Shown: piece after piece, positions 9,355 to 39,163 of the stretch
How the letters are laid out: every line of letters starts with the position of its first letter
Position numbering within the stretch: the first letter of the stretch is position 1
IMG/VR virus record: IMGVR_UViG_3300023174_000038
Span: 186,001 to 250,000 of that record
Strand: one strand, 5' to 3'
DNA: 64,000 bases
Translations under genes and position numbers: made by a program
The notes under the pieces: model-generated
Databases searched by the model: none
Told to the model about the DNA's origin: nothing
What the model saw: only the letters and a program-made list of their open reading frames with translations

Positions 9355-9379
9355 TGTATAATACTATTAAATAAAATAC

Positions 9380-9454: not shown

Positions 9455-9461
9455 AATATAT

Positions 9462-9537
9462 TCTCTTGTAGCTCAGTCGGTAGAGCGTTTGACTGTTAAT
9501 CAAAATGTCCCTGGTTCGAGCCCAGGCAAGGGAGCCA
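9462..9537 (+). tRNA. tRNA-Asn(GTT)
   Basis: TTTGA-CT GTT AA-TCAAA, CCA. Confidence 0.95.
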
Positions 9538-9542
9538 AATTT

Positions 9543-10241
9543 ATGCATAAGATAAAAATATTCAGTCATATCATTGATACCCCAGATAGTTTAATGATTT
9601 TTAATAATCAATTCTCTTTACTTAAAGAAACTGGGTTACTAGACGTGGCATACAAAATATATCTATGCGTTAACGGAGAAGTATCTAAATTTGATACAAT
9701 ACAAGAATTAGCGAATCAATATCATAATGTAGAAATGATTCATACCAATACTAGTATTGAACATTATGAATATCCCACATTAAATTTTCTTAAAGAAAAT
9801 ATTGATAACGATACTGATTCTTATATTTTGTATTTTCATGTTAAAGGTGCTAGTAAAAACGAATCCAAAGATATACGTAATTGGCGTTTTCTATTAGAAT
9901 ACTATAATATCATAAAATATCAAACCTGTATAGATTATCTTAACAAGGGATATGATACAGTTGGTATACTATATAGAGAGGGTTTTCATAGTCAATGGCT
10001 ACACTATAGTGGAAACTTTTGGTGGGCTAATTCTAATCATATTAAGCGTTTACCTAAATTACCTCACCCATCTGATACATTAGGTGGCGGGAATAGTAAA
10101 ATTAGTATGTTGCCGTATATGAATGAAAACTTTAGATATGACCATGAAGCTTGGATAGGTTGTGTCAAACCCTGGAATTATATATCGTTGTTCCAAGATG
10201 ATATAGAAGAAGAAACACGTAGGATAATGAAATTATGTTAG
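9543..10241 (+). CDS. Hypothetical protein, possibly glycosyltransferase-like
   Basis: YEYPTL, LYFHVKG, HYSGNFWWA motifs; start moved past the tRNAs. Confidence 0.6.
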   Translation: MHKIKIFSHIIDTPDSLMIFNNQFSLLKETGLLDVAYKIYLCVNGEVSKFDTIQELANQYHNVEMIHTNTSIEHYEYPTLNFLKENIDNDTDSYILYFHVKGASKNESKDIRNWRFLLEYYNIIKYQTCIDYLNKGYDTVGILYREGFHSQWLHYSGNFWWANSNHIKRLPKLPHPSDTLGGGNSKISMLPYMNENFRYDHEAWIGCVKPWNYISLFQDDIEEETRRIMKLC

Positions 10242-10951
10242 TATCAGTAGACCCTTTTTATCATGTAACCATTGACAATTTTTTTGAGGAATCTTTAGCA
10301 GAAAAACTATCTAATGAATTTATTGATTATAATGATGAACGTTGGTTTTATTACAATAATGTTATTGAAAATAAAAAAACATTAAACGATTGGAGATTTT
10401 TACCCAAACATATATATCAAGCATTCACTCAGTTTTGCTCAGATGAATTTGTTAAAAAACTACAAGATATGACTGGTATAGAAAAATTGTATCCTGATTA
10501 TGGATTGCATGGTGGCGGCTGTCATATGCATGGTAGAAACGGTAAACTTAATATACATAGAGATTATTCTATACACCCTAAATTAGGATTAGAACGAAAG
10601 TTAAATCTTATTATATATCTATCTAAAGATTGGGATACGTCATGGGGAGGTGGATTAGAATTATGGTCACACGATGATGAAAACAATCAACCAAAAGAAA
10701 AAGTAAAAGAAGTAGAATGTGTTTTTAATCGTGCTGTACTTTTTGATACGACACAAGATTCTTGGCATGGTTTACCTGAACCCTTACGTTGTCCTGCAGG
10801 TGTCTATAGAAAAAGTTTAGCTATGTATTATATGACTAACCCTAGCCTAGAGGTTGACCCAAGACAACGGGCATTATTTGCACCCACAGAAAATCAGAAA
10901 AATGATATTGAAGTAAAAAACTTCATAGAAGAAAGAACAAAGCTTTCTTAA
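10235..10951 (+). CDS. 2OG-Fe(II) oxygenase
   Basis: HRD...LIIYL..WGGGLELW..FNRAVLF..SWHG..RKS. Confidence 0.88.
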   Translation: MLVSVDPFYHVTIDNFFEESLAEKLSNEFIDYNDERWFYYNNVIENKKTLNDWRFLPKHIYQAFTQFCSDEFVKKLQDMTGIEKLYPDYGLHGGGCHMHGRNGKLNIHRDYSIHPKLGLERKLNLIIYLSKDWDTSWGGGLELWSHDDENNQPKEKVKEVECVFNRAVLFDTTQDSWHGLPEPLRCPAGVYRKSLAMYYMTNPSLEVDPRQRALFAPTENQKNDIEVKNFIEERTKLS

Positions 10952-10954
10952 TAG

Positions 10955-11029
10955 CTGGCGTTAGTATAATGGATAATACAATCGGCTTCTACCCGATGAA
11001 TGTGGGTTCGATTCCTGCACGCCGGACCA
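10955..11029 (+). tRNA. tRNA-Arg(TCT)
   Basis: ATCGG-CT TCT AC-CCGAT, CCA. Confidence 0.92.
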
Positions 11030-11083
11030 AATAATATACGTATTTTATAGGTTAGAGATAAATACTCTAACCGAGGAGAGAGT

Positions 11084-11425
11084 ATGTGGAAATGTAAAAC
11101 ATGTGAAAAAGAAGGACAGGAACATTTTTATAAAAGCCAAGCTTGGTATTGTAAAAGTTGTTGGAATGTTCGTACGGCACACCGATCTAAAAACAATGTA
11201 AAAATTCTTAAAGAAGAATACGGTGGAAAATGCACCAAGTGTGGTTACAATAAATGCATGGATGCACTACAGTTTCACCATGTTGATCCTACTAAAAAGG
11301 AATTTTCATTAGGGTTAGCAAGACAAAAAAATTTAGATAAACTTAGAAAAGAGATGGACAAGTGTATTTTGGTTTGTAGTAATTGTCATATTGAAATTCA
11401 CCATGACATACATAAAAATAAATAA
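11084..11425 (+). CDS. HNH endonuclease with Zn-binding Cys pairs
   Basis: CxxC pairs, LQFHHVDP, CILVCSNCH. Confidence 0.85.
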   Translation: MWKCKTCEKEGQEHFYKSQAWYCKSCWNVRTAHRSKNNVKILKEEYGGKCTKCGYNKCMDALQFHHVDPTKKEFSLGLARQKNLDKLRKEMDKCILVCSNCHIEIHHDIHKNK

Positions 11426-11427
11426 AA

Positions 11428-11456
11428 TAGAGGTTCGATTCCTCTACGCCGGACCA
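11428..11456 (+). repeat. Duplicated 3' end (T arm and acceptor strand) of tRNA-Arg(TCT)
   Basis: AGAGGTTCGATTCCTCTACGCCGGACCA vs GTGGGTTCGATTCCTGCACGCCGGACCA at 11002-11029. Confidence 0.9.
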
Positions 11457-12035
11457 TTATTGAATTAGAAGTTGCCAATCTTCATTGCTATAGTGATAAT
11501 CTTCCAACACTTCTAGCATTCTTGCAAAGACAATTAATCCTCTTTTGTGATTAATTAATTCTATTTGATGTAATTTTATCTTCTTTTCAGCAAAAGTTTT
11601 TAATAAATTCTCACCCTCTTTTTTCAACTTAATTTTTTTTGAAACAATATTCAATTTGGCTATTAGATTGTTACATTCTACGATGGCAACAGAGGTTTGT
11701 TGTTGTAATGCACGTATTTCTATTTTCATTTTTAGTATTAAGTCATCAAATTCTGGGTTAATGTGTGGTAGAAATTGTGTTATCATAACAGACAGTCTAC
11801 CAAAGACTTCAGTATTAAGATTGAAGTCATCATAGTGATCACCTGTTGAATCATAGTGTTCACGTTTAGTTGGATCACTTAACACTTCATATGCTAATTT
11901 CATTCGCTTAAACTTTTCTACATCTCCTCCCTTGTCAGGATGATATAATTGTGCCAAGATTCTGTATTTTTGTTTGATTTCTTCAGACGTACAGGTTTTT
12001 GGTAATTCTAAATCATCGTATAGGGAGGTTGTCAT
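11457..12035 (-). CDS. DnaJ-domain protein
   Basis: LYDDLEL...YHPDKGG...AYEVLSDPTKREHYD. Confidence 0.88.
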   Translation of the reverse strand: MTTSLYDDLELPKTCTSEEIKQKYRILAQLYHPDKGGDVEKFKRMKLAYEVLSDPTKREHYDSTGDHYDDFNLNTEVFGRLSVMITQFLPHINPEFDDLILKMKIEIRALQQQTSVAIVECNNLIAKLNIVSKKIKLKKEGENLLKTFAEKKIKLHQIELINHKRGLIVFARMLEVLEDYHYSNEDWQLLIQ

Positions 12036-12088
12036 AACAATATTTATCATGAAATATTGCATGTAGTATTAAGTACTATGTTTAAAAT

Positions 12089-12198
12089 TTGACAATAAAT
12101 CCTCAATCTGCTATACTCTAGTTATAGATTGATTGAACAAGTTTTTGGGAAACAGTGAAACAAAAGAATTTGACAATAAATGGTAGTTATGATACAAT
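12089..12198 (+). promoter_or_regulatory. Two tandem sigma70-type promoters
   Basis: TTGACAATAAAT...TATACT and TTGACAATAAAT...TACAAT, 17-nt spacers. Confidence 0.75.
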
Positions 12199-12286
12199 CA
12201 TAGCATGAGTTGAGAAAGTCATCGTACTAATCAACAAGGTTCTTTAAAATTCTGAGTTATCATATAGCCCTGTTTAAGTTACAGGG

Positions 12287-12501
12287 ACTATATGAAAATA
12301 CATTAAGGTCACCTAATCCGTTAGGCAGGTCTATGGGGTCAGCCGGTGGACGACGCCGGGTCGCATAGGGTGCAAGAAGCGTATCGACAATAGCAATATT
12401 GTTTAACGTGACGGGCAGTTAGGCAGTAATGACAGAAACAACGATCCAGTAGACGGTACTGGTGGATACAGTTTACGTTCCTTAATGTGTTTTCATATAG
12501 T
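12287..12501 (+). ncRNA. Candidate structured ncRNA D (22-bp closing stem)
   Basis: ACTATATGAAAATACATTAAGG/CCTTAATGTGTTTTCATATAGT enclosing a GC-rich multibranch core. Confidence 0.65.
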
Positions 12502-12502
12502 G

Positions 12503-12629
12503 TGTTATTAGTTTTGCTGACGTAAGCGCCTGAGTAAACGTCAACTCTAACTAACTATGTATAGAAACGGTAAACTTGCAAATAATTCCGTTGAGCATAG
12601 CAAATAGTGCGTCAGCAAAACTAATAACA
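12503..12629 (+). ncRNA. Candidate structured ncRNA E (22-bp closing stem)
   Basis: TGTTATTAGTTTTGCTGACGTA/TGCGTCAGCAAAACTAATAACA, ends 1 nt before tRNA-Glu. Confidence 0.65.
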
Positions 12630-12630
12630 T

Positions 12631-12705
12631 GGAGCATTCGTCTATCGGTTAGGACATTAGGTTTTCATCCTAAGAAGAGGAGTTCGATTCTCCTATGCTC
12701 TTCCA
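12631..12705 (+). tRNA. tRNA-Glu(TTC)
   Basis: TTAGG-TT TTC AT-CCTAA, CCA. Confidence 0.93.
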
Positions 12706-12708
12706 AAG

Positions 12709-12905
12709 AATCCCGTTACTACTTTCGTTAAAGTAGCGTTTGAATAGCGATAGAGTTCCGGTGGCAGAAAACCGTTAGCGTGAGGATTAAAAATACCCTC
12801 GCAGGCTCTGATAGGCAGAATCTCAACTGCACACAGACTTTGAATAAATGGAGATGGACAGAGTAACTGCTCAATTAAGGGCTTGTGTGGAAACAAGTAG
12901 CTTAT
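12709..12905 (+). ncRNA. Candidate structured ncRNA F
   Basis: Hairpins CTACTTT/AAAGTAG, CGGT/ACCG, GCGTGAGG/CCTCGC, GAG-TAACTG-CTC, CTTGT/ACAAG. Confidence 0.5.
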
Positions 12906-12915
12906 ACTAATTTTT

Positions 12916-12978
12916 TGAGTTACATCGCCTTGATACTTCTCTCAGTAATGAGACACTAGGTCTTGCAACCGTAACTCA
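12916..12978 (+). ncRNA. Small tRNA-sized structured element G
   Basis: TGAGTTAC/GTAACTCA closing stem; inner TCTCA-GTAA-TGAGA. Confidence 0.4.
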
Positions 12979-12982
12979 TCTT

Positions 12983-13068
12983 GGAGATGTAGGAAAATTG
13001 GTAACCCCAGGAGACTGTAAATCTTCCGCCTTATGGCACTACTGGTTCAACTCCAGTCGTCTCCACCA
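12983..13068 (+). tRNA. tRNA-Tyr(GTA)
   Basis: GGAGA-CT GTA AA-TCTTC, variable arm, CCA. Confidence 0.93.
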
Positions 13069-13135
13069 AGAATATAGGAGGGTCGCTGGGCAGGCGTACT
13101 CTTAAACGACCTAGGCCAAAGGGGTGTCCTATTCT
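13069..13135 (+). ncRNA. Small structured element H
   Basis: ATAGGA/TCCTAT outer stem, GGGTCG/CGACCT inner stem. Confidence 0.4.
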
Positions 13136-13141
13136 GTGTTA

Positions 13142-13216
13142 GGTCTCAAAGTGTTCACGGACGCATACATGCCTGTCACGCATGAGGAGCGGGATCGTTA
13201 CCCGCTGGGACCGCCA
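13142..13216 (+). tRNA. tRNA-Asp(GTC), atypical T loop
   Basis: CATGC-CT GTC AC-GCATG; T loop ATCGTTA; GCCA end. Confidence 0.88.
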
Positions 13217-13262
13217 AAATATTTGACAACAATCATTGTATGATATATAGATAACAAGTTTT

Positions 13263-13347
13263 GCGAGTGTGGTGGAATCGGAATACACACAAGACTTAAA
13301 ATCTTGCGCCGCAAGGATTGAGGGTTCAAGTCCCTCCACTCGCACCA
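13263..13347 (+). tRNA. tRNA-Leu(TAA)
   Basis: CAAGA-CT TAA AA-TCTTG, variable arm, CCA. Confidence 0.95.
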
Positions 13348-13356
13348 AAGAATGAT

Positions 13357-13433
13357 GCCTCTATAGCGCAATTGGTTAGCGCAGCGGACTCATAATCCGT
13401 TGGTTCCTGGTTCGAGTCCAGGTGGAGGCACCA
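13357..13433 (+). tRNA. tRNA(CAT), probably Ile2 (lysidine type)
   Basis: GCGGA-CT CAT AA-TCCGT; context resembles proteobacterial tRNA-Ile2. Confidence 0.8.
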
Positions 13434-13441
13434 GTTAAGCA

Positions 13442-13533
13442 GGAGACGTGGCCGAGTGGCCGAAGGCAGCAGGTTGCTAACCTGTCGTATGTAGTAATAT
13501 GTACCGTGAGTTCGAATCTCACCGTCTCCACCA
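13442..13533 (+). tRNA. tRNA-Ser(GCT)
   Basis: GCAGG-TT GCT AA-CCTGT, long variable arm, CCA. Confidence 0.95.
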
Positions 13534-13534
13534 A

Positions 13535-13717
13535 TTAGCGATGGTTTGTTTTGTTTATGATTTGATGTAAGATGTTAGGATCATCACTCATCATCCTAGC
13601 TAGTAAACCAGTAAGATAACCCCGTTCATATAATAATTGTTCGTGGCTATCTTTGTAATTACGTTTGTTTTGACGCAACAACTTTTCAACAACATCAATA
13701 CAGTTTTGTAGTTCCAT
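13535..13717 (-). CDS. Small hypothetical protein (MELQNC...)
   Basis: TAAATA 4 nt upstream of ATG 13717. Confidence 0.6.
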   Translation of the reverse strand: MELQNCIDVVEKLLRQNKRNYKDSHEQLLYERGYLTGLLARMMSDDPNILHQIINKTNHR

Positions 13718-13732
13718 ACTGTATTTATAAAA

Positions 13733-13930
13733 GAACGTTCCGGGTGTCTCCGGATAGTGTGACCCACACGATGAGAAGTAGTGTGACAACTACGGGTGGT
13801 AGTCTTTAAACCGAAAGGCCGCTAGCAATGCGAGAACGGTCCCTGTCGGGAAGCGGGTGGAAGGAGTGTGTGATGGGTATGATAGCGTCATATCTTGATA
13901 CTCTATAATTACCGCCGGGGGATGCAGAGC
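13733..13930 (+). ncRNA. Candidate structured ncRNA I
   Basis: GC-rich; hairpins TCCGG/CCGGA, GTGTG/CACAC, GTAGT/ACTAC, TATGA/TCATA; TCCCT/GGGGA. Confidence 0.55.
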
Positions 13931-13936
13931 ATATAT

Positions 13937-14014
13937 GCAACGGTGGCAGAGTGGTCCAATGCAACGGATTGCAAATCCGTAAAACCGTCAGTTCAAATCT
14001 GACCCGTTGCTCCA
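13937..14014 (+). tRNA. tRNA-Cys(GCA)
   Basis: ACGGA-TT GCA AA-TCCGT, U73-CCA. Confidence 0.93.
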
Positions 14015-14019
14015 AACAA

Positions 14020-14184
14020 TTATAGTGCTTGTATAAAAGCAAGTGCTGTTTCAATATTATTGAAGAATTTCATAGTCAATTTGAAATTGTCAACATCAAA
14101 TACCATAATGTAAAATGTATGTTCAGCACTCATTGATAAGTGTATAACAAGTCCTGTTTTCGTGATAGCGTCATATATGTACAT
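14020..14184 (-). CDS. Small hypothetical protein (MYIYDAITK...)
   Basis: TAAATA 5 nt upstream of ATG 14184; longer ORF overlaps tRNA-Gly. Confidence 0.55.
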   Translation of the reverse strand: MYIYDAITKTGLVIHLSMSAEHTFYIMVFDVDNFKLTMKFFNNIETALAFIQAL

Positions 14185-14196
14185 AAATATATTTAT

Positions 14197-14270
14197 GCGG
14201 GGTTCGTATAGTGGTAATACCTCAGCCTTCCAAGCTGATGCGGAGAGTTCGATTCTCTTACCCCGCTCCA
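14197..14270 (+). tRNA. tRNA-Gly(TCC)
   Basis: TCAGC-CT TCC AA-GCTGA, U73-CCA. Confidence 0.95.
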
Positions 14271-14286
14271 TTATTATAAATATCAT

Positions 14287-14817
14287 ATGAAATTACTATT
14301 TGTGCCATTAGATATAAAAGTCACTGATATCAACTTTGATTTAGGTGAAAAACAAAACTATCACATAAATCATTGGGAAACATTTGATGTTATTGGGAAA
14401 GAAAATAATTATCAAAACTATAACAGTTTATTAAATCAACTTCCAATAACGGATATCACTATCTTTACACATAAGATTCAAAAAACTAAAATTGGACCTC
14501 ATTATGATTATCATGGTTTGCATGATGAATTATATAAACATTTCAAAGAAAATGAGCCAGCCGGCTATCATGTAGTTTTAAAAGGTAAAGGTGACTCATT
14601 AGAAATTTTTAACGGCAAAGAATGGATTAACCCTATATTACCTAAAGTGCCTATAGCATACTTACTAAATTTAACTTCTTGCATACATAGAGTAAAAGAA
14701 GATAATTCAAGAGAAACACTGTATATACAAGGTTGGTTAGATATTAAAAAACATAATCAATTAATAGAACGCAGTTTAAAACAATATGGCAATCTAGCAG
14801 TATATAGCCAAGCTTAA
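14287..14817 (+). CDS. Hypothetical protein, possible double-stranded beta-helix oxygenase
   Basis: PHYD...IHRV...R pattern; TATAAATA upstream. Confidence 0.5.
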   Translation: MKLLFVPLDIKVTDINFDLGEKQNYHINHWETFDVIGKENNYQNYNSLLNQLPITDITIFTHKIQKTKIGPHYDYHGLHDELYKHFKENEPAGYHVVLKGKGDSLEIFNGKEWINPILPKVPIAYLLNLTSCIHRVKEDNSRETLYIQGWLDIKKHNQLIERSLKQYGNLAVYSQA

Positions 14818-15093
14818 TTATTTACCAATTCTATTTAAAATGTTCATTGCTCTGGTTCTTAACCGTTCAGTAAATTCTGATTCAGTTAATGCTCCTTTAG
14901 CAAGATTACATTTTCTACAAGTTACTTGAAGATTATTATACGTGGTTTCTCCACCTTTACTTTCAGCAATCACATGATCTATGTGTATTTCTTTATCGGA
15001 TAAGTCTTCATCACAATAGACACACCATTTTCCGTCCCTTTCAATAACTCTACGACGTAGGTTAAGAGGGATGTATTGTTTCTTTTGTAGCAT
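14818..15093 (-). CDS. HNH endonuclease
   Basis: RDGKWCVYC, HIDHVIAESKGG, NLQVTCRKCNLAK. Confidence 0.9.
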   Translation of the reverse strand: MLQKKQYIPLNLRRRVIERDGKWCVYCDEDLSDKEIHIDHVIAESKGGETTYNNLQVTCRKCNLAKGALTESEFTERLRTRAMNILNRIGK

Positions 15094-15158
15094 AAATTTA
15101 TTTAGCTACCCAAATATAGTAGACAGATAAATAGTTTTCTGTTATTATGAATAATAAA

Positions 15159-15243
15159 GCGGACGTGGCGTAATTGGCAGCCGCACCAGATTTAGGTTCT
15201 GGCGTCGTAAGATGTGTGAGTTCGAGTCTCACCGTCCGCACCA
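15159..15243 (+). tRNA. tRNA-Leu(TAG)
   Basis: CCAGA-TT TAG GT-TCTGG, CCA. Confidence 0.95.
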
Positions 15244-15247
15244 AACA

Positions 15248-15321
15248 GGGGGATTGATGTAATGGGAGCCTGGGACCTTTGCAAGGTCTTCGTAACAGTT
15301 CGATTCTGTTATCCTCCACCA
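15248..15321 (+). tRNA. tRNA-Ala(TGC)
   Basis: GGACC-TT TGC AA-GGTCT; G3:U70; CCA. Confidence 0.9.
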
Positions 15322-15327
15322 AGATAG

Positions 15328-15402
15328 CGCGGGGTAGAGAAGTAGTAACTCATCAGGCTCATAACCTGAAGATCGGCGGTGCGAATCCGTCCCCCGCATC
15401 CA
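15328..15402 (+). tRNA. Initiator tRNA-fMet(CAT)
   Basis: CGCGGGG/CCCCGCA with C1:A72 mismatch; TCAGG-CT CAT AA-CCTGA. Confidence 0.9.
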
Positions 15403-15406
15403 GTTA

Positions 15407-15483
15407 CGGAGTGTGGCGCAGTCTGGTAGCGCACCTGGTTTGGGACCAGGGGGTCCAAGGTTCGAATCCTTGTACTCCGACCA
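15407..15483 (+). tRNA. tRNA-Pro(TGG)
   Basis: CCTGG-TT TGG GA-CCAGG, CCA. Confidence 0.95.
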
Positions 15484-15505
15484 ATGTTTTTAAAAAGGAA
15501 ATAGT

Positions 15506-15670
15506 ATGACATGCAGAGGATATGATGCGAAAGCAGTGAAAGTTTCAAAGACAGTTAAACGTGCCGCGGCAAAAATTATGGACAACCATAAGCGTGGTGA
15601 CTTTATTCGTAGTTATGTAGAGATTGAAAGAAGTAATTCACGTACAGGTTCTCGTAAGGATAGCAAATGA
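15506..15670 (+). CDS. Small basic hypothetical protein (MTCRGYDAK...)
   Basis: 54-aa ORF with AAGGA SD. Confidence 0.55.
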   Translation: MTCRGYDAKAVKVSKTVKRAAAKIMDNHKRGDFIRSYVEIERSNSRTGSRKDSK

Positions 15671-15846
15671 GTAAAGGTAGCTTGCCAAGACCTTATAGTG
15701 TTGATTTGAAAACTTTCAACAATAATTGGGATAATATCTTTCGCAAGCCTGATCCAAGAATTATTGAGGATCAAAAGAATGAAGATGAAGCATTTGAACA
15801 AATTGCTAGTCAATCAGAAGTTAAAGATAGTACCCAAGGTGGTTAA
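15667..15846 (+). CDS. Small hypothetical protein (MSKGSLPRP...)
   Basis: 59-aa ORF coupled by ATGA overlap. Confidence 0.55.
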   Translation: MSKGSLPRPYSVDLKTFNNNWDNIFRKPDPRIIEDQKNEDEAFEQIASQSEVKDSTQGG

Positions 15847-15855
15847 ATAGAATGT

Positions 15856-15930
15856 GGATCGTTAACTCAGTGGTAGAGTAGCGCCTTTACACGGCGAATG
15901 TCGGGAGTTCGACCCTCTCACGATCCACCA
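15856..15930 (+). tRNA. tRNA-Val(TAC)
   Basis: CGCC-TT TAC AC-GGCG, CCA. Confidence 0.93.
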
Positions 15931-15945
15931 AACAAAGGAGTAATT

Positions 15946-16086
15946 ATGAGCAAAAGTGAAGATGTAATTAATAGAGCATACGGACACATTGTCAAAGAAG
16001 TTACTCCGGTACTTATTTTTGATATTACTATATTTCGTGGTTTTAAATACTATTGGTACAAATTACTTAGAAAAGTAACAAGATAA
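15946..16086 (+). CDS. Small hypothetical protein
   Basis: AAGGAG SD then ATG 15946. Confidence 0.5.
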   Translation: MSKSEDVINRAYGHIVKEVTPVLIFDITIFRGFKYYWYKLLRKVTR

Positions 16087-16090
16087 AATT

Positions 16091-16627
16091 ATGGCACATC
16101 CGCAACAATTTAATTATATACAAAAACTTAAACTATTATATCCAACTCATTTCTTTAATAGCAAAGTACTTGAAGTGGGTAGTCTTAACATTAATGGTTC
16201 AATACGAATCTTTTTTAGTCATTGTGATTATTTAGGAATTGATGTTGGTCCGGGTAATGATGTTGACTTAGTATGTGAAGGTCAAACGTTAGATCATCCA
16301 GACAATACATATGATACAGTTGGTAGCTGTGAATGTTTTGAACATAATCCTTATTGGGTAGAAACATTCGTTAACATGCATCGTATGGCTAAACCAAATG
16401 GACTAGTGTTTATGACATGTGCTACTACTGGTAGACCAGAACACGGTACTACTCGTACTACACCACAAGATAGTCCTCTTACTACAGGTATAGGGTGGGA
16501 CTATTATAGAAATTTAACTGAAGAAGATTTCAGAAAAGAATTAGACATAGATAATATGTTTAGTACATATAAATTTGAAGTGGGTTCACCCCATGCAGAT
16601 TTGTATTTTTATGGTATTAAAAAATAA
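16091..16627 (+). CDS. Class I SAM-dependent methyltransferase
   Basis: VLEVGS, YLGIDVGPG, CFEHNP. Confidence 0.8.
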   Translation: MAHPQQFNYIQKLKLLYPTHFFNSKVLEVGSLNINGSIRIFFSHCDYLGIDVGPGNDVDLVCEGQTLDHPDNTYDTVGSCECFEHNPYWVETFVNMHRMAKPNGLVFMTCATTGRPEHGTTRTTPQDSPLTTGIGWDYYRNLTEEDFRKELDIDNMFSTYKFEVGSPHADLYFYGIKK

Positions 16628-16635
16628 AGGTAAAT

Positions 16636-16857
16636 ATGTCACAAAGCAGAGCAAGATATTCAAGTGAAGAAGCCGCACTTATGGTCGGTAATCGTTTTGA
16701 TTTAGTTCTTATCGCTTCACAAAGAGTAAGAGAATTAAAGCGAGGACATCGTTCACTACTTACTACTAAAGCAGGACCAATGGTAACTGCATTAGAAGAA
16801 ATTGAACAAGGACTTGTTGGACGTGAATATCTTAAACGTATTAGAAAAAATTTGTAA
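16636..16857 (+). CDS. rpoZ: RNA polymerase omega subunit
   Basis: ARYSSEEA..VGNRFDLVLIASQRVREL..ALEEIEQG. Confidence 0.9.
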   Translation: MSQSRARYSSEEAALMVGNRFDLVLIASQRVRELKRGHRSLLTTKAGPMVTALEEIEQGLVGREYLKRIRKNL

Positions 16858-16861
16858 ATAT

Positions 16862-16935
16862 ATCTCCCTAATGTAATGGCAGCATACCGGTCTCCAAAAC
16901 CGTTAGTCAAGGTTCGAGTCCTTGGGGGGATGCCA
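16862..16935 (+). tRNA. tRNA-Trp(CCA)
   Basis: CGGT-CT CCA AA-ACCG, G73-CCA. Confidence 0.9.
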
Positions 16936-22063: not shown

Positions 22064-22209
22064 TATTACATTTTTCACAAACAAAAGTACTACTTTTGCT
22101 CCCTTAGGGGCTTCAAAATCGCTAGAAAGTTCAGGAACTTATACTGATACACTTCTAGCGGTTTTTGCCAATATTTGACAATAAATGGGCTTTCATGTAC
22201 AATTCATCT

Positions 22210-23913: not shown

Positions 23914-24067
23914 TAACCGTGTTGAAATTGAATTAGATTTAAATGAACATGAAGTATATTTGTTGGCTATGGAAGCACATAAACGTGATATTACGCTAAA
24001 TAAGATGATAGAGAGTATTTTACAAGAAGTGGTTGACAAACATAAAGTCAACGAAACACTAGTGTAA
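23903..24067 (+). CDS. Small protein, possible ribbon-helix-helix
   Basis: MENDNRVEIELDLNEHEVYLLAMEAHKRDITLNKMIESIL...; GGAG SD. Confidence 0.5.
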   Translation: MENDNRVEIELDLNEHEVYLLAMEAHKRDITLNKMIESILQEVVDKHKVNETLV

Positions 24068-24094
24068 AACGTTATATAAGTATAGGAGATAGTT

Positions 24095-24397
24095 ATGAAA
24101 AAAATTCTATTAGCATTATCATTACTAGCGGTAACCGGAACAGCAATGGCACAACACTATCATGGACACGGTTTACGTCACGGTGGTTACTATCGTGGTC
24201 CTGGAGTAGGTTGGTGGGTAGCTCCTGTAGTTGTAGGAGCGATCGGTTATGAATTAGGTCGTCAACAAGTTATTGTACAACAACAGCCGGTAGTTATACA
24301 ACAGCAAACTGTGCCAGCTAATGTAACATGTACCGATTGGAAAGAGGTACAAACATCAGATGGAAAAATATATAGAGAACGAACTTGTACACAGTAA
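24095..24397 (+). CDS. Secreted hypothetical protein
   Basis: Signal peptide; AGGAG SD. Confidence 0.7.
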   Translation: MKKILLALSLLAVTGTAMAQHYHGHGLRHGGYYRGPGVGWWVAPVVVGAIGYELGRQQVIVQQQPVVIQQQTVPANVTCTDWKEVQTSDGKIYRERTCTQ

Positions 24398-24442
24398 CCA
24401 AAATGTCTTGTGTGATATTGTTCAATATGTTACAATATTCAT

Positions 24443-24730
24443 ATGAACGATATTTTTTATGGAATTTTTAATTGGATCAAAGATGATTACCGTACTCATC
24501 CTATTAGGTTTATCATTGAGTTGCTTGCTTGGGGCATTTCAATTGGGTGTTCAATTACCATGGCTCTCACAGTCCCCAATCCGCCTTTACTTGCTTTGTA
24601 CCCTATTTGGATCTTCGGCTGTAGTCTCTATGCTTGGGCTAGTTTTACTAGGAAATCTTTTGGGATGTTGGCTAACTACTTGTTACTTGTGACAATTGAT
24701 AGTGTGGGATTAATAAGGATGATAATGTGA
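24443..24730 (+). CDS. Membrane protein
   Basis: Three hydrophobic helices. Confidence 0.65.
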   Translation: MNDIFYGIFNWIKDDYRTHPIRFIIELLAWGISIGCSITMALTVPNPPLLALYPIWIFGCSLYAWASFTRKSFGMLANYLLLVTIDSVGLIRMIM

Positions 24731-25104
24731 TAAACAAATTAGAACAATATAAAAAATACTTTGCCTTTACCGGTACTAGTACTCGTAGTGAATATTGGGG
24801 TGTATACTTAATTAGTTGGGCCCTATTAGGTCTTACTAGTACATTGGCTTTTATAGTATTTGTATTAAGTTTACCCTTTACTATTGTAGTAATAGGATTA
24901 CTCGGATGGATTACTTCACTGGCAATATTATGTGTAGGTAGTGTACTATCATGTTGGTTATGGATTGCAACCACAATTAGGCGTTGTAATGATGCTGGAA
25001 TCAATTCATGGTTTGCTATTACCGTATTATTACCCCCACCTTTTGGAACTATTCCAGTCGTTGTATTTGGGTGCTTAGATCCTGACACTACTGCCAAAAA
25101 TTGA
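24727..25104 (+). CDS. DUF805 family membrane protein
   Basis: YFAFTG...RSEYW...RRCNDAG. Confidence 0.8.
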   Translation: MINKLEQYKKYFAFTGTSTRSEYWGVYLISWALLGLTSTLAFIVFVLSLPFTIVVIGLLGWITSLAILCVGSVLSCWLWIATTIRRCNDAGINSWFAITVLLPPPFGTIPVVVFGCLDPDTTAKN

Positions 25105-25137
25105 CATAAATACGTTTCCTATGTTATAATATGCATT

Positions 25138-25296
25138 ATGAAACAAAAAATACTATCATTCATTATTGAACAGCCCAAACATCGGGCACATAGAGTGTTG
25201 TTTTCTTGCAACACACCGTTCAAACCTAAGGTTGTACAATCTAAAAAAGGTCTGTACAATCGTAAACCTAAGCATCCAAACCGCACTGAAATTTAA
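25138..25296 (+). CDS. ArfA-like alternative ribosome rescue factor (52 aa)
   Basis: TPFKPKVVQSKKGLYNRKPKH vs E. coli ArfA [23 protein letters not shown]; own sigma70 promoter 25101-25130. Confidence 0.6.
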   Translation: MKQKILSFIIEQPKHRAHRVLFSCNTPFKPKVVQSKKGLYNRKPKHPNRTEI

Positions 25297-25308
25297 CAAG
25301 GTAAACAT

Positions 25309-26040
25309 ATGAAATCCTACATAACATTATTGTTGGCAATAATTGCCTCAATTTCGGCCATGGCTCAGGACTATGATATTAGTGATACTATAATTAATAG
25401 TTCACATTTAAGATCAACCTATTATACAAAAAGTTCATTTTTTGATTCCGGTACTGATTTTGATACATTTATTAAAACAGTTGATAAAACAAAACCAACA
25501 GTCATTCATTCGCATGGCTGTTCAGGTATTTGGGGTGATGATACTACATTAAAAAATTTCTATACAGGGTTAGGCTTTAACTTTGTAATGCTTAATTTTC
25601 ACAAGAGAGGTGATGCAAGTGCATCATGTTCATCCTCCGGAGGATTTAGTTATCACGCAGATCCCTATAAACGAATACCACCTAGATTATTGGAATTAGT
25701 AAACCACATAAATGTTCTTAAAGCCAATGGAATAACTACCATATATGCGACTGGTCACAGTGAAGGTGGAATGGTAGTACAATTATTGCAGGACGAAGTG
25801 TCAAAGGCCATCATTCATTCTATGAGTTGTGTACCTCTTATAGAAAATGAGCGTAATGCCAAAGTACAATATTTACATTTGGTTTCACGGAATGATCCAT
25901 TATTAACCCGACCCGGAGTTAGTCATATATGTACAAATCGTAACAATTATACAACCGTTACCTCATCCGTACGGTCACATTCAGCACTAGCAGACCCATC
26001 CTGGGAATCAAAAATTAAAGAATTTTTAAATGTAAAATAA
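25309..26040 (+). CDS. Secreted alpha/beta hydrolase
   Basis: Signal peptide, HGC, GHSEGG nucleophile elbow, downstream D and H. Confidence 0.75.
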   Translation: MKSYITLLLAIIASISAMAQDYDISDTIINSSHLRSTYYTKSSFFDSGTDFDTFIKTVDKTKPTVIHSHGCSGIWGDDTTLKNFYTGLGFNFVMLNFHKRGDASASCSSSGGFSYHADPYKRIPPRLLELVNHINVLKANGITTIYATGHSEGGMVVQLLQDEVSKAIIHSMSCVPLIENERNAKVQYLHLVSRNDPLLTRPGVSHICTNRNNYTTVTSSVRSHSALADPSWESKIKEFLNVK

Positions 26041-26049
26041 CACCAAAAT

Positions 26050-26078
26050 TTGACAATAAATGGATTTGGTGCTACAAT
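26050..26078 (+). promoter_or_regulatory. Early promoter repeat
   Basis: TTGACAATAAATGGATTTGGTGCTACAAT. Confidence 0.8.
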
Positions 26079-26109
26079 ACTTATATTGAATCATTAAAAG
26101 GAAACAAAA

Positions 26110-26334
26110 ATGTCACTTAAACAAAAAGCATTACTTCAAACACTGGCCATCATTGTCGGAACCGTACTAGGATCAGTACTAATTGCATATCTTATTTCTG
26201 TACTTGATAGAGATACTTTAGTATACATTACTGGTACAGCATTTTTCGGATTTATGTTTTATTCTATTTATGGGCTTGTTTTGAGCAGGCTTGAGTCTAA
26301 AGAAACTTTGGATAAATTGTCATCCAAAATTTGA
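26110..26334 (+). CDS. Small membrane protein
   Basis: Two TM segments; stop lies inside the next TTGACA. Confidence 0.6.
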   Translation: MSLKQKALLQTLAIIVGTVLGSVLIAYLISVLDRDTLVYITGTAFFGFMFYSIYGLVLSRLESKETLDKLSSKI

Positions 26335-26359
26335 CATTAAATGGTTTTGGTGCTATAAT
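26331..26359 (+). promoter_or_regulatory. Early promoter repeat
   Basis: TTGACATTAAATGGTTTTGGTGCTATAAT. Confidence 0.8.
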
Positions 26360-26388
26360 AGAGTCTTATTCAGTCAAAAGGAGTTCTT

Positions 26389-26664
26389 ATGAACATTAAG
26401 CAAATTAATACTGCTATCATGCAGGGTGATCTTACTAATGAAGAATTGAACAGTATCAATGATGCTATTCGTTTTGCTCGTGCCCAACTAGTGGTACGAA
26501 ACAAATCGGCATTGACGATTGGATCCAATGTTAAATTTACTAGTTCAACCCGTGGTACAATCTCTGGTGTTGTAAAGAAAATCAATCGTAAATTTGTAAT
26601 TGTAGATCAACCGGGTCAGTTCCGTAGTTGGAGAGTGCCCGCTAACATGTTGGAGGTTTTATGA
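26389..26664 (+). CDS. Hypothetical protein, SH3-like C-terminus
   Basis: AAGGAG SD; IGSNVKF...GVVKKINRK...WRVPANML. Confidence 0.65.
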   Translation: MNIKQINTAIMQGDLTNEELNSINDAIRFARAQLVVRNKSALTIGSNVKFTSSTRGTISGVVKKINRKFVIVDQPGQFRSWRVPANMLEVL

Positions 26665-26834
26665 GTTATTTTGTCGGAATCGTTATCGTTATTGCCCTCG
26701 TTGCAATTGGCCCGTTACTGACTATTTGGTCGTTGAACGTATTGTTCCCGGCATTAGCTATTAAGTACTCATTAGAGTCTTGGTTAGCTGTAGTAATTTT
26801 AGGTGGATTGTTTAAAGTAGGAAAAACAAAATGA
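26661..26834 (+). CDS. Small membrane protein
   Basis: MSYFVGIVIVIALVAIGPLL...; GGAGG SD. Confidence 0.55.
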   Translation: MSYFVGIVIVIALVAIGPLLTIWSLNVLFPALAIKYSLESWLAVVILGGLFKVGKTK

Positions 26835-26992
26835 GTGATTTGGAAATTGATATCGTTGAAATGTTGGGTCAAGGCACACACCCTGCAACTATCTCCGCTG
26901 TACTTGAAGTGCCTGTCACTTGGGTTTATGAAGTGTCCGATTCCTTACAGGATAGGGAACTGTTTAGCCCGTACAAAACAGTCAACTCCTAA
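26831..26992 (+). CDS. Small HTH-like protein
   Basis: MSDLEIDIVEMLGQGTHPATISAVLEVPVTWVYEV... Confidence 0.55.
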   Translation: MSDLEIDIVEMLGQGTHPATISAVLEVPVTWVYEVSDSLQDRELFSPYKTVNS

Positions 26993-26994
26993 AT

Positions 26995-27051
26995 TTGACA
27001 ATAAATGGATTTGGTGCTATAATAGAATCTTAGACAGTTAAACAAAGGACT
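26995..27051 (+). repeat. Promoter-leader cassette repeat
   Basis: TTGACAATAAATGG...TATAATAGAATCTTAGACAGTTAAACAAAGGACT; near-identical copies at 47-48.7 kb. Confidence 0.85.
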
Positions 27052-38061: not shown

Positions 38062-38619
38062 TTATCTAGTTAGATAGGGGGCATAAATCTTTTCTAGTGA
38101 ATTAATAGTATGCTCAGTATTTTCATCCTCATGCTTAACAGCAATGCCACCTGCATTACTCCAAAGATTTAAATACTTACCATAATCATCTACTAAGACA
38201 TTTGGCTCACTATTACTCAATGCGTATTTGTGTTTATGTTGAGTAAAGATAGCATTTTGTGTAGCATTTGGATTGTGTTCATCTAACCAATCTTTTTTAG
38301 CTTCTACACTAGCACTAGCATATGGTCCACGTAATGGGGCACTTAATACAGTATATGGAATTTTATGTTGATTTAACCATTGTACAACTTTGCCTCCGCC
38401 TTGAAGAGGTTTTAGTTCTCTAAAAAACTTATATACTTCTTCAGGGCTACTTGAAGCTAACTCATTTATTGATGTTTCAGTATCAGGAATCTCTTTGTAA
38501 TTACCAACATTATGTTTTGCGGCCCAAGCCCCAAAGAAATCAGCTTGTACTCCATCCATATCTAAGTATAGATGCGGCATCTTTTTGTTTGTATTTTCCA
38601 TCAATTCCTTAAGTTTCAT
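38062..38619 (-). CDS. 5'(3')-deoxyribonucleotidase, HAD family
   Basis: LDMDGV, LSAP, KKDWL, LVDD. Confidence 0.85.
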   Translation of the reverse strand: MKLKELMENTNKKMPHLYLDMDGVQADFFGAWAAKHNVGNYKEIPDTETSINELASSSPEEVYKFFRELKPLQGGGKVVQWLNQHKIPYTVLSAPLRGPYASASVEAKKDWLDEHNPNATQNAIFTQHKHKYALSNSEPNVLVDDYGKYLNLWSNAGGIAVKHEDENTEHTINSLEKIYAPYLTR

Positions 38620-38626
38620 TTAGCTA

Positions 38627-39163
38627 TTATATCACAAACGGTATAATAAGCCAAATGCCTTGGGCTAATAGTAATGAACCAAATATACTAACTCCAATAC
38701 TACCCCAATACATACGTTTATCTACAGCTAGAATACTAGCAGATAATAACACAATAGCTAATTGAAATGCCATTGCGGCAAATGTTAACCATGGCGTATG
38801 CTTTTTGGCTTCATCACGTTCACTTTCAATCTGTAATGCTTTAGCCATTAACTCTTTCTTGCCCTCACCTTTAGCCGGATCACTTTCATAACGGTCAATC
38901 TTAGCTTGTAATATTTCTTTACGTTTTATATCGGTAGTAGCTTCTAATTGCCCTTCAGCAATACTTTGCTTGATAGATTTTGCTTGGTAAAAGTTCCAAG
39001 TATCATTTGCTTTGATAGTGTTACTTAATATTTTACCACTAAATCCACTAGACATATAGGTTGTAATTGCTAATAATAGTGCAATGACAGTAATTACCCA
39101 TCCTGCTCTATCTTTAATTTGTGCTTCACGTTCACTGCGTGATAATGTTTTTACTTCTGCCAT
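38627..39163 (-). CDS. DUF4337-like membrane protein
   Basis: ANDTWNFYQAKSIKQ; three TM segments. Confidence 0.7.
   Translation of the reverse strand: MAEVKTLSRSEREAQIKDRAGWVITVIALLLAITTYMSSGFSGKILSNTIKANDTWNFYQAKSIKQSIAEGQLEATTDIKRKEILQAKIDRYESDPAKGEGKKELMAKALQIESERDEAKKHTPWLTFAAMAFQLAIVLLSASILAVDKRMYWGSIGVSIFGSLLLAQGIWLIIPFVI

What the first reader, a model, noticed from the sequence alone, without database searches (positions are those of the whole stretch)
25101..25296. Unannotated ArfA-like ribosome rescue factor in pre-truncated form
Seen: a 52-aa ORF below the track cut-off with PFKPKVVQSKKGLYNRKPKH and its own promoter. Established: E. coli ArfA works as a truncated product of a non-stop mRNA and is repressed by tmRNA tagging. 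Inference: the phage version has its own stop at the active length, so it escapes tmRNA control and gives constitutive rescue. This fits the translation-stress theme.
Basis: partly seen in the sequence, partly recalled or inferred. Interest (0 to 1): 0.62.

Follow-up and report, generated by a model that had tools for sequence, protein, structure and literature searches.

The report
Phage ArfA-like ribosome rescue peptide
A 52-residue gene in a 349-kb freshwater jumbo phage is a real, conserved, distant relative of the bacterial ribosome-rescue factor ArfA that ends at its own stop codon, so the phage probably frees stalled host ribosomes without the host's usual control; phage ArfA genes are already known, so this is a divergent variant.

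Summary
Window 25138-25296 (+) is a 52-aa ORF behind a perfect sigma-70 promoter (25101-25130). It is a real gene. At least 265 IMG/VR contigs and 207 protein clusters encode relatives, and substitutions are mostly synonymous in this frame only.

It misses the Pfam cut-offs for ArfA (13.6 bits) and DUF7230 (16.4 bits), but wider profiles support remote ArfA homology:
- A 144-member profile finds only ArfA chains in the whole PDB (E 0.003).
- Against 33 bacterial ArfAs, hhalign gives 92.5% probability and score 38.7; column shuffles reach at most 14.6.
- An annotated phage ArfA (Pseudoalteromonas phage J2-1) passes both Pfam models and bridges the two groups.

The F25, strand, Y-x-R and KH positions are kept. 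The invariant KGKGS motif, the hydrophobic tail and the 3' hairpin of arfA are absent, so "pre-truncated" is right.

New here:
- The mRNA looks leaderless: the ATG lies 6-9 nt after the -10 box in 80 of 80 relatives.
- The same phage, and two complete relatives, carry a tmRNA gene.

Rescue activity and release-factor partnership are inferred, not shown. Phage ArfA is already annotated and published, so this is a new variant of a known kind.

The parts
25101..25130 (+). Sigma-70-type promoter: -35 TTGACA at 25101-25106, 18-nt spacer with TG before the -10 box, -10 TATAAT at 25125-25130. The predicted transcription start is at about 25137-25138, at the start codon.
   Evidence: 12/12 consensus match. 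The same arrangement is present in 80 of 80 related loci, with 6, 7 or 9 nt between the -10 box and the ATG. It belongs to a phage promoter family with 37 strict copies in the genome.
25138..25296 (+). ArfA-like ORF, 52 codons plus TAA; no Shine-Dalgarno sequence and no leader.
   Evidence: M1 and K2 are nearly invariant in close relatives, which fixes the start codon.
25177..25203 (+). Codons 14-22 (K-H-R-A-H-R-V-L-F). They align with E. coli ArfA residues 12-20, the N-terminal helix region that includes A18.
   Evidence: hhalign alignments. R16 is kept in 136/144 members, L21 in 138/144 and F22 in 130/144. The AlphaFold2 model has its only helix at residues 19-22.
25213..25236 (+). Codons 26-33 (T-P-F-K-P-K-V-V). 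They align with ArfA P23-E30: F25 and the Q27-E30 strand that docks on RF2 domains II/IV.
   Evidence: Alignment. F28 is kept in 131/144 members and P27 in 137/144. The roles of F25 and Q27-E30 are taken from PMC8012679.
25237..25275 (+). Codons 34-46: a basic segment ending in Y40-x-R42-x-x-K45-H46. It aligns with the ArfA mRNA-channel loop and its KH motif, and lacks two residues of the KGKGS motif.
   Evidence: Y40 is kept in 129/144 members, R42 in 143/144, K45 in 141/144 and H46 in 123/144. The G38 column is a gap in 131/144. The KH pocket is described in PMC8012679.
25294..25296 (+). In-frame TAA stop, 6 codons after KH.
   Evidence: The tail after the motif is 5-9 aa in all 56 close relatives, against a median of 25 aa in bacterial ArfA.
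25309..26040 (+). Context only: a 243-aa gene with a signal-peptide-like N-terminus and a G-H-S-E-G motif. It is probably co-transcribed with the ORF and is an insertion relative to sister phages.
   Evidence: No Pfam or PHROG hit. Contigs of related strains join about 25245-25288 directly to about 26041-26050. In 46 of 80 relatives the stop codon lies inside the next promoter's -35 box.

Best explanation
The ORF encodes a divergent, phage-borne member of the ArfA superfamily: a small basic peptide that probably rescues ribosomes stalled at the 3' end of broken, stop-less mRNAs. By analogy with E. coli ArfA, the C-terminal basic segment (Y40, R42, K45-H46) would insert into the empty mRNA entry channel of the 30S subunit. 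The F28 and K-x-K-V-V segment would add a strand to domains II/IV of a host class-I release factor, most likely RF2, which then hydrolyses the peptidyl-tRNA. Bacterial arfA makes active protein only from a truncated, stop-less mRNA, and tmRNA tagging represses it. The phage gene instead ends at an ordinary stop codon at about the active length and has neither the hairpin nor the hydrophobic tail. Its product should therefore be released normally and accumulate whether or not trans-translation is working. It is transcribed from a consensus sigma-70 promoter as an apparently leaderless mRNA, probably early in infection. Shown here: the gene is real and under selection, it is remotely homologous to ArfA, it has its own stop, it has no 3' hairpin, and the promoter-to-ATG geometry is conserved. 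Inferred: ribosome binding, the release-factor partner, rescue activity, escape from tmRNA control, and timing. The likely benefit is recycling of ribosomes trapped on degraded mRNAs during infection. This would work alongside the phage's own tmRNA and its 25 tRNA genes.
For: Real gene. ArfA homology: (1) the ArfA model's only match in the whole 348.7-kb phage genome is this ORF; (2) the A2 profile (144 sequences) against 177,635 distinct PDB sequences returns only six ArfA chains, with the best E 0.0032; (3) hhalign of A2 against E. coli ArfA gives 82%, and against 33 diverse bacterial ArfAs gives 92.5%, P 5e-7, score 38.7 over 41 columns, while the reversed alignment scores 11.5 and 200 column shuffles reach at most 14.6; (4) substitution spectra match column by column at ArfA L19, F25, R26, R28, V29, Y39, R41, K44 and H45 (H/Y/N in both families); (5) there is a bridge sequence: Pseudoalteromonas phage J2-1 ATN93434.1 (51 aa, annotated ArfA) passes Pfam ArfA (41.3 bits) and DUF7230 (28.6 bits), also lacks GKGS, aligns to A2 at 93.5%, and hits phrog_6310 and phrog_2701, the same PHROGs hit by 13 and 17 A2 members. 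Own stop and no non-stop control. The E. coli arfA hairpin was recovered as a positive control. Promoter and leaderless geometry. Rescue theme: a phage tmRNA scores 91.2 bits on RF01850, and the two complete related jumbo phages also have one. A pelagiphage ArfA is reported to be transcribed during infection (PMC12753301).
Against: The protein itself is below the curated cut-offs of both Pfam ArfA (13.6 against 25.5) and DUF7230 (16.4 against 27), and has no NCBIfam or PHROG hit. The KGKGS motif is invariant in all 33 bacterial ArfAs sampled but absent from 131 of 144 family members; this copy keeps only K-K-G. The residue aligned with E. coli A18 is Val here (Val 71, Ala 24, Ile 19 of 144), and A18T blocks RF2 activation in E. 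coli (PMC8012679). Activation could therefore differ, or the alignment may be offset at that point. For a short basic peptide that binds the same rRNA channel, convergence cannot be fully excluded. The A2 profile did not recover ArfA loci in 301 bacterial genomes at E<=0.01. There are no RNA data, no assay, and the host is unknown.
Confidence: 0.6

Rival explanations
1. It is an ArfA-derived ribosome binder that does not activate a release factor. The peptide would occupy the empty A site and mRNA channel of stalled or vacant ribosomes to block host ArfA or SmpB-tmRNA access, or to park or shut off host ribosomes. That would make it a takeover or inhibitory factor rather than a rescue factor.
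For: The channel-binding half (Y-x-R-x-x-K-H) is the best conserved part. KGKGS is lost, and the A18-equivalent residue is a bulky Val in this clade; A18T in E. coli still binds ribosomes and recruits RF2 but does not activate it (PMC8012679).
Against: The F25-equivalent and the strand segment that recruits RF2 are as conserved as the channel segment (F28 in 131/144 members). The phage itself supplies a tmRNA, which argues that it promotes rescue rather than blocks it. Many family members have Ala at the A18-equivalent position (24/144).
Confidence: 0.17
2. It is an unrelated small basic nucleic-acid-binding peptide, for example a DNA or RNA chaperone or a transcription modulator of early infection, whose resemblance to ArfA is convergent or compositional.
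For: 13 of 52 residues are Lys or Arg. Curated family models are not passed. The complex prediction gave no verdict. The AlphaFold2 model is an extended chain with a single 4-residue helix.
Against: Column shuffling and reversal of the ArfA alignment remove the signal (score 38.7 against a maximum of 14.6), so composition does not explain it. The match spans 41 ordered columns that include non-basic positions (L, F, P/F, V, Y). ArfA chains are the only PDB hits. A sequence that passes the ArfA cut-off bridges the two groups.
Confidence: 0.12
3. It is a DUF7230-type protein with a function distinct from ArfA, since single sequences score better against Pfam DUF7230 than against ArfA.
For: 50 of 56 close relatives match DUF7230 at E<=1 (best E 1.4e-6), against 12 of 56 for ArfA. 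The nearest ESM Atlas cluster is named DUF7230 (score 0.93).
Against: DUF7230 has no known function, so this is not a real alternative mechanism. The best DUF7230 match in all six frames of E. coli K-12 lies inside arfA. One phage ArfA passes both models over the same residues. At the profile level the family is closer to ArfA (score 38.7) than to six bacterial DUF7230 proteins (score 21.0).
Confidence: 0.08

Closest known systems
Bacterial ArfA (Pfam PF03889; E. coli YhdL; PDB 5MDV, 5MGP, 5H5U, 5U4I)
   Same: The active forms are about the same size (52 aa here, 52-55 aa for ArfA). The order of elements is the same: an A-x-x-(A/V)-L-(L/F) helix region, a P/L-F aromatic residue, a (K/R)-x-(K/R)-V-(E/V) strand, then K-K...Y-x-R-x-x-K-H. 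ArfA chains are the only PDB family the profile hits.
   Different: It is below the Pfam cut-off. It lacks the invariant KGKGS motif (a two-residue deletion). It has no hydrophobic C-terminal tail and no 3' hairpin or RNase III site, and it has an ordinary stop codon, so there is no non-stop mRNA or tmRNA feedback. It is phage-encoded and apparently leaderless.
Annotated phage ArfA genes: Pseudoalteromonas phage J2-1 ATN93434.1, Citromicrobium phage vB_CbaS-RXM USM11455.1, pelagiphage HTVC027P gp30; also an unannotated ORF in Ralstonia jumbo phage RsoM2USA
   Same: These are phage-borne. J2-1 (51 aa) and RsoM2USA (40 aa) also stop a few residues after KH, and J2-1 also lacks GKGS. J2-1 aligns to this family at 93.5% and shares phrog_6310 and phrog_2701 with it. 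HTVC027P gp30 is transcribed during infection (PMC12753301).
   Different: Those proteins pass the Pfam ArfA cut-off (41.3, 29.6 and 25.7 bits), while this one does not. J2-1 keeps the canonical ArfA N-terminus and has a Shine-Dalgarno-led start that overlaps the upstream gene. The Citromicrobium copy keeps a long hydrophobic tail.
Pfam DUF7230 (PF23876), function unknown
   Same: It gives the best single-sequence Pfam match (16.4 bits; 50 of 56 close relatives match at E<=1). Members are small basic proteins with a K-Y-x-R-x-x-K-H-like end.
   Different: The bacterial DUF7230 proteins sampled have an N-P-V-A-K-type N-terminus and align only weakly with this family (hhalign 23.5%). Several carry hydrophobic tails.
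ArfT (Francisella) and BrfA (Bacillus): release-factor-dependent rescue peptides
   Same: They are functional analogues: very small proteins with a basic C-terminus in the mRNA channel. BrfA shares the KH motif. ArfT (40 aa) does not seem to be controlled by mRNA truncation the way ArfA is (PMC6299226, PMC8012679).
   Different: No sequence relationship to either was tested here. ArfT works with RF1 or RF2, and BrfA is made from a non-stop mRNA. Both are chromosomal genes of bacteria.

Membership tests
ArfA (PF03889) | Score at or above the curated Pfam gathering cut-off (25.5 bits) | tested here: not met
   13.6 bits, E 0.046, residues 28-46 on model positions 23-43. Only 3 of 144 family members reach E<=0.01.
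ArfA (PF03889) | Detectable homology to ArfA at profile level, specific and not compositional | tested here: met
   ArfA chains are the only PDB hits, with the best E 0.0032. hhalign gives 92.5%, score 38.7 over 41 columns, against a shuffle maximum of 14.6 and a reversed score of 11.5. There is a bridging sequence, J2-1.
ArfA (PF03889) | Conserved KGKGS motif in the mRNA-channel segment | tested here: not met
   G35-K36-G37-S38 are invariant in all 33 bacterial ArfAs. The corresponding column is a gap in 131 of 144 family members, and this copy keeps only K-K-G.
ArfA (PF03889) | KH motif near the C-terminus (binds a pocket of the mRNA entry channel) preceded by Y-x-R | tested here: met
   Y40 is kept in 129/144 members, R42 in 143/144, K45 in 141/144 and H46 in 123/144. 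They align with Y39, R41, K44 and H45 of E. coli ArfA.
ArfA (PF03889) | F25-type aromatic residue and a following strand that docks on RF2 domains II/IV | tested here: met
   Met at sequence level only. F28 (131/144) aligns with F25, and K-P-K-V-V aligns with R-Q-R-V-E. Contact with RF2 was not shown.
ArfA (PF03889) | Small residue at the A18 position (A18T abolishes RF2 activation) | tested here: inconclusive
   The aligned residue is V20 here. Across the family it is V 71, A 24, I 19 and E 15 of 144. The alignment has a one-residue gap nearby.
ArfA (PF03889) | Expression from a truncated non-stop mRNA (3' hairpin, RNase III or terminator, hydrophobic tail) repressed by tmRNA | tested here: not met
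   There is no conserved 3' hairpin, whereas the E. coli hairpin was recovered. Tails are 5-9 aa and none is hydrophobic in 56 close relatives, against a median of 25 aa with 18 of 26 hydrophobic in bacterial ArfA.
ArfA (PF03889) | RF2-dependent peptidyl-tRNA hydrolysis on non-stop ribosomes; synthetic lethality with ssrA | not testable with these tools
   This needs biochemical and genetic assays. The complex prediction with E. coli RF2 gave no verdict.
DUF7230 (PF23876) | Score at or above the curated cut-off (27 bits) | tested here: not met
   16.4 bits, E 0.0098 for this protein. 42 of 144 relatives match at E<=0.01, with the best E 1.8e-8.
DUF7230 (PF23876) | Profile similarity to bacterial DUF7230 proteins | tested here: inconclusive
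   hhalign gives 23.5%, score 21.0, against a thin alignment of six bacterial members.
Leaderless mRNA genes | Transcription start at or within a few nucleotides of the start codon, with no Shine-Dalgarno sequence | tested here: inconclusive
   The geometry fits. The -10 box ends 7 nt before the ATG here, and 6, 7 or 9 nt before it in 80 of 80 relatives. Most other copies of this promoter have leaders of about 18-35 nt, many with an AAAGGA-type Shine-Dalgarno sequence. No transcription start was mapped, because no RNA runs exist.
ArfT / BrfA | Sequence membership | not tested
   No ArfT or BrfA sequence was fetched. They were compared only through the literature (PMC6299226, PMC8012679).

The most novel reading that the evidence does not exclude
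The peptide may not be a simple ArfA copy. It could be one half of a phage-carried rescue module: a leaderless, uncontrolled ArfA-like factor paired with a phage tmRNA. Such a module would keep ribosomes available when mRNAs are being cut en masse, either by phage-driven host mRNA decay or by host abortive-infection RNases, making it a takeover or counter-defence device. With KGKGS lost and Val at the A18 position, it may also have changed partner specificity, for example working with RF1 as well as RF2, as ArfT does.
Probability: 0.2. Interest if true: 0.75.

Novelty: new variant of a known kind. Interest (0 to 1): 0.5.

Why it matters
Ribosome rescue is essential in bacteria, and ArfA is normally held in reserve by a feedback loop through tmRNA. 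This gene belongs to a large family of at least 207 protein clusters and 265 viral contigs. The family is recognised so far only as DUF7230-like proteins and as two PHROGs of unknown function, yet it appears to be ArfA stripped of that feedback and carried by phages. If active, it would show that phages commonly bring their own deregulated rescue factor, here together with a tmRNA and 25 tRNAs. It would give function to DUF7230-like and PHROG 2701/6310 proteins. It would also provide natural minimal ArfA variants, lacking KGKGS and with other residues at the A18 position, for dissecting how release factors are recruited without a stop codon. The conserved promoter-to-ATG geometry also offers a clean natural set of candidate leaderless phage mRNAs.

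Tried and rejected
- **Close relatives in cultured phages:** none found. Megablast of 24000-27000 and tblastn of the 52-aa protein against 50,697 phage records found nothing useful. A 1130-aa neighbouring ORF also has no match there.
- **Single-sequence and narrow-profile searches:** NCBIfam and PHROGs gave nothing for the single protein. The narrow 56-sequence profile found nothing in the PDB; only the wider 144-sequence profile reached ArfA.
- **Profile against bacterial genomes:** the A2 profile on 301 bacterial genomes recovered neither ArfA nor DUF7230 loci at E<=0.01.
- **Complex prediction with E. coli RF2:** no verdict (best score 0.18, mark 0.32; controls not run). This is not evidence for or against binding.
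- **AlphaFold2 monomer:** an extended chain with one short helix (residues 19-22), pTM 0.27. It is unsuitable for a fold search, so none was run.
- **Expression:** no RNA run holds the locus. The contigs laid show presence only.
- **Local hairpin:** a hairpin at codons 31-41 of this copy is not conserved in 17 relatives. I rejected it as an arfA-like cleavage site.
- **Context look-ups:** look-ups for family members with longer tails returned only short contigs.
- **Rejected readings:**
  - It is not a chance ORF or a non-coding element.
  - It is not a second copy or paralogue in this genome; there is a single hit.
  - The family is not chromosomal in bacteria. The only two hits in bacterial genome bins lie on contigs with phage clamp-loader and helicase genes.

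Full report
**What is there.** Window 25138-25296 (+) is a 52-codon ORF ending in TAA. Directly upstream is a 12/12 sigma-70 consensus pair: TTGACA at 25101-25106, an 18-nt spacer with TG before the -10 box, and TATAAT at 25125-25130. The window is bases 186001-250000 of a 348,701-bp IMG/VR virus record judged complete, with 36.2% G+C. It is a jumbo phage known from lake and freshwater metagenomes in seven studies. An independent run holds an identical contig over 25021-25859.

**It is a real gene.**
- The word search found 55 homologues of 48-64 aa at 54-88% identity.
- A pattern scan of IMG/VR found 265 contigs that encode a relative.
- The exhaustive HMM search of 1.84 billion cluster representatives found 207 clusters at E<=1e-3.
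- Among 51 distinct DNA copies, 60% of differing codons are synonymous in this frame, against 12% and 5% in the other frames. Third-position differences outnumber second-position ones about 3 to 1.
- M1 and K2 are nearly invariant in close relatives, which fixes the start codon.
- Only two hits came from 185,579 species-representative bacterial genomes. Both lie on contigs with phage clamp-loader or helicase genes, so they are phage contigs inside bins.
- A profile search of 301 bacterial genomes found no further copy.

**Is it ArfA-like?** On its own the protein is sub-threshold for two Pfam families: DUF7230 (16.4 bits, cut-off 27) and ArfA (13.6 bits, cut-off 25.5). That ArfA match is the model's only match in the entire phage genome. 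I therefore built wider profiles.
- An alignment of 144 diverse family members (A2), searched against every distinct PDB sequence, returned six hits. All six are ArfA chains, and the best has E 0.0032.
- I collected 33 diverse bacterial ArfAs from genome searches with the Pfam model and from E. coli K-12.
- hhalign of A2 against that set gives 92.5% probability, P 5e-7 and score 38.7 over 41 columns.
- The signal is not compositional. The reversed ArfA alignment scores 11.5, and 200 column shuffles give 8.5 +/- 1.8 with a maximum of 14.6.

The aligned columns share their substitution spectra:

| E. coli ArfA position | Phage family position | Conservation in 144 members |
|---|---|---|
| L19 | L21 | 138 |
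| F25 | F28 | 131 |
| R26 / R28 | K29 / K31 | K or R in most |
| V29-E30 | V32-V33 | V; E is second choice at 33 |
| Y39 | Y40 | 129 |
| R41 | R42 | 143 |
| K44 | K45 | 141 |
| H45 | H46 | 123; H/Y/N in both families |

A natural intermediate ties the groups together. The 51-aa protein of Pseudoalteromonas phage J2-1, annotated ArfA, passes Pfam ArfA (41.3 bits) and DUF7230 (28.6 bits). It aligns to A2 at 93.5%. It also hits phrog_6310 and phrog_2701, the same two PHROGs of unknown function matched by 13 and 17 members of A2. In addition, the best DUF7230 match in all six frames of E. coli K-12 falls inside arfA. I conclude that the family is a divergent branch of the ArfA superfamily. At the profile level it is closer to ArfA (score 38.7) than to six bacterial DUF7230 proteins (score 21.0).

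**What is kept and what is lost.** According to the review PMC8012679:
- ArfA F25 and the strand Q27-E30 dock on RF2 domains II/IV.
- Residues 15-24 form a short helix at the decoding centre.
- The basic C-terminus, including a KH motif, fills the empty mRNA entry channel.
- Removing the last 17-18 residues leaves full activity, but a 40-residue form is dead.

The phage protein has counterparts of all three modules and ends at the equivalent of about residue 51. This is close to the 52-55 residues of mature ArfA (PMC6299226). Three things are missing:
- **The KGKGS motif.** It is invariant in all 33 bacterial ArfAs and deleted in 131 of 144 family members; this copy keeps K-K-G.
- **The hydrophobic tail.** Tails after the motif are 5-9 aa in 56 close relatives, against a median of 25 aa, mostly hydrophobic, in bacteria.
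- **The 3' hairpin.** The E. coli hairpin is recovered by folding. The phage ORF has no conserved 3' structure, and its one local hairpin is not conserved in 17 relatives.

One caution applies. The residue aligned with A18, where A18T blocks RF2 activation, is Val here (Val 71, Ala 24, Ile 19 of 144).

**Expression signals.** In all 80 related loci examined, a TTGACA / TA(T/C)A(A/C)T pair sits upstream. The gap between the -10 box and the ATG is 6 nt in 5 loci, 7 nt in 66 and 9 nt in 9. Transcription should therefore start at or next to the AUG, with no Shine-Dalgarno sequence: a leaderless mRNA. This is specific to the gene rather than typical of the phage. Most other copies of the same promoter family (37 strict copies in the genome) have leaders of about 18-35 nt, many with an AAAGGA-type ribosome-binding site. 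In 46 of the 80 relatives the TGA stop lies inside the -35 box of the next promoter. In this phage a 243-aa gene (25309-26040) has been inserted between the two. Contigs of sister strains join about 25245-25288 directly to about 26041-26050. No RNA data exist for the locus, so the transcription start is inferred.

**Genome context.** Outside the window, at genome bases 38319-38707, the phage has a permuted, betaproteobacterial-type tmRNA gene.
- ARAGORN reads the tag as ANDSQFALAA.
- It scores 91.2 bits on RF01850 and 90.1 bits on RF04321.
- The two complete related jumbo phages that carry the ORF (524 kb and 367 kb) also match this model, at 95.4 bits and, at a contig end, 44.4 bits.
- The phage has no SmpB, Pth or RF-1-domain gene, so it would depend on host SmpB and release factors.
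- The window also holds 25 tRNA genes and an Hsp70 gene.

The phage therefore supplies both rescue routes.

**Mechanism and confidence.**
- **Best reading (0.6):** a deregulated, phage-encoded, release-factor-dependent rescue peptide that works like mature ArfA.
- **Rivals:** an ArfA-derived ribosome binder that does not activate the release factor (0.17); a convergent basic peptide (0.12); a DUF7230 protein with a distinct function (0.08, overlapping with the first, because DUF7230 looks ArfA-related).
- **Uninformative tests:** the complex prediction with E. coli RF2 gave no verdict and counts for nothing. The AlphaFold2 monomer is an extended chain with one short helix at residues 19-22. 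That is what one would expect of such a peptide off the ribosome, but it is weak evidence.

**Novelty.** Phage ArfA is already known. It is annotated in GenBank in at least two cultured phages. It is present but unannotated in Ralstonia jumbo phage RsoM2USA, where the opposite strand was called. It is reported as transcribed in pelagiphage HTVC027P (PMC12753301). What is new here:
- recognition that a large, phage-restricted, sub-threshold family belongs with ArfA;
- the family-wide natural stop and loss of KGKGS;
- the conserved leaderless geometry;
- the pairing with a phage tmRNA.

I rate it a new variant of a known kind, with interest 0.5.

Noticed in passing
Outside the window: genome G000:C1 38319-38707 (-), = L098:2345-2718; also L136 (G688) and L137 (G689): The phage carries a permuted, betaproteobacterial-type tmRNA gene with tag ANDSQFALAA (RF01850 91.2 bits, RF04321 90.1 bits). 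Both complete related jumbo phages with the ArfA-like ORF also match it. No SmpB gene was found in the phage.
   Followed up: partly
window 25309-26040 (+): This 243-aa gene has a signal-peptide-like start and a G-H-S-E-G (serine-hydrolase-like) motif, with no Pfam or PHROG hit. It is an insertion: sister strains join the end of the ArfA-like ORF directly to the promoter at 26050.
   Followed up: partly
window 26050-26078, 26331-26359, 26995-27023 (+); 47021-48661 (-, six copies): These are arrays of a near-identical promoter (TTGACAATAAATGG...TGCTATAAT). Most are followed by a conserved leader of about 30 nt ending in AAAGGA before small genes, which looks like an early-gene cassette system. 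There are 37 strict copies in the genome.
   Followed up: partly
window 22175-22203 (+) with ATG at 22210; genome 27941 (-) and 299430 (-): Other candidate leaderless genes have the same promoter type 6-7 nt before an ATG: ORFs of 112 aa, 84 aa and 265 aa. The last has a DnaJ-like N-terminus.
   Followed up: no
window 6135-6163, 12089-12117 and 12170-12198 (+): Copies of the promoter sit in front of the tRNA clusters. Two are followed by only a two-codon ATG-NNN-TGA frame, so they probably drive tRNA transcripts rather than proteins.
   Followed up: no
window 7529-16935 (+): There are 25 tRNA genes, including three tRNA-Met (CAT anticodon) and three tRNA-Arg.
   Followed up: no
window 53518-55464 (-), 3877-5016 (+), 61544-62878 (-): There is a full-length Hsp70/DnaK homologue (860 bits), a cytochrome P450 domain protein and an ATP-dependent DNA ligase. 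A P450 is unusual cargo for a phage.
   Followed up: no
window 24727-25104 (+): The upstream neighbour is a DUF805 membrane protein (48.5 bits; phrog_12855, moron/host-takeover category). Its stop codon overlaps the -35 box of the ArfA-like promoter.
   Followed up: no
L132:1534-1653 (+) = Ralstonia phage RsoM2USA MG752970.1, about 111844-111963: This is an unannotated 40-aa ArfA with KGKGS that stops just after KH (Pfam ArfA 25.7 bits). The record annotates a hypothetical protein (RsoM2USA_176) on the opposite strand instead.
   Followed up: partly
L089, L130, L120, L121, L126, L128 (bacterial arfA loci): Several bacterial ArfA reading frames end in ...LLAA, ...LMAA, ...KAA or ...QAA, resembling the C-terminus of the SsrA degradation tag. 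This may be an encoded degron. L090 is a 38-aa bacterial-bin ArfA with a stop right after KHR.
   Followed up: no
L030 and L067 (IMGVR_UViG_3300027749_002876, 524,565 bp): One related jumbo phage carries two diverged copies of the ArfA-like gene (83% and 71% identical to this one), about 336 kb apart.
   Followed up: no
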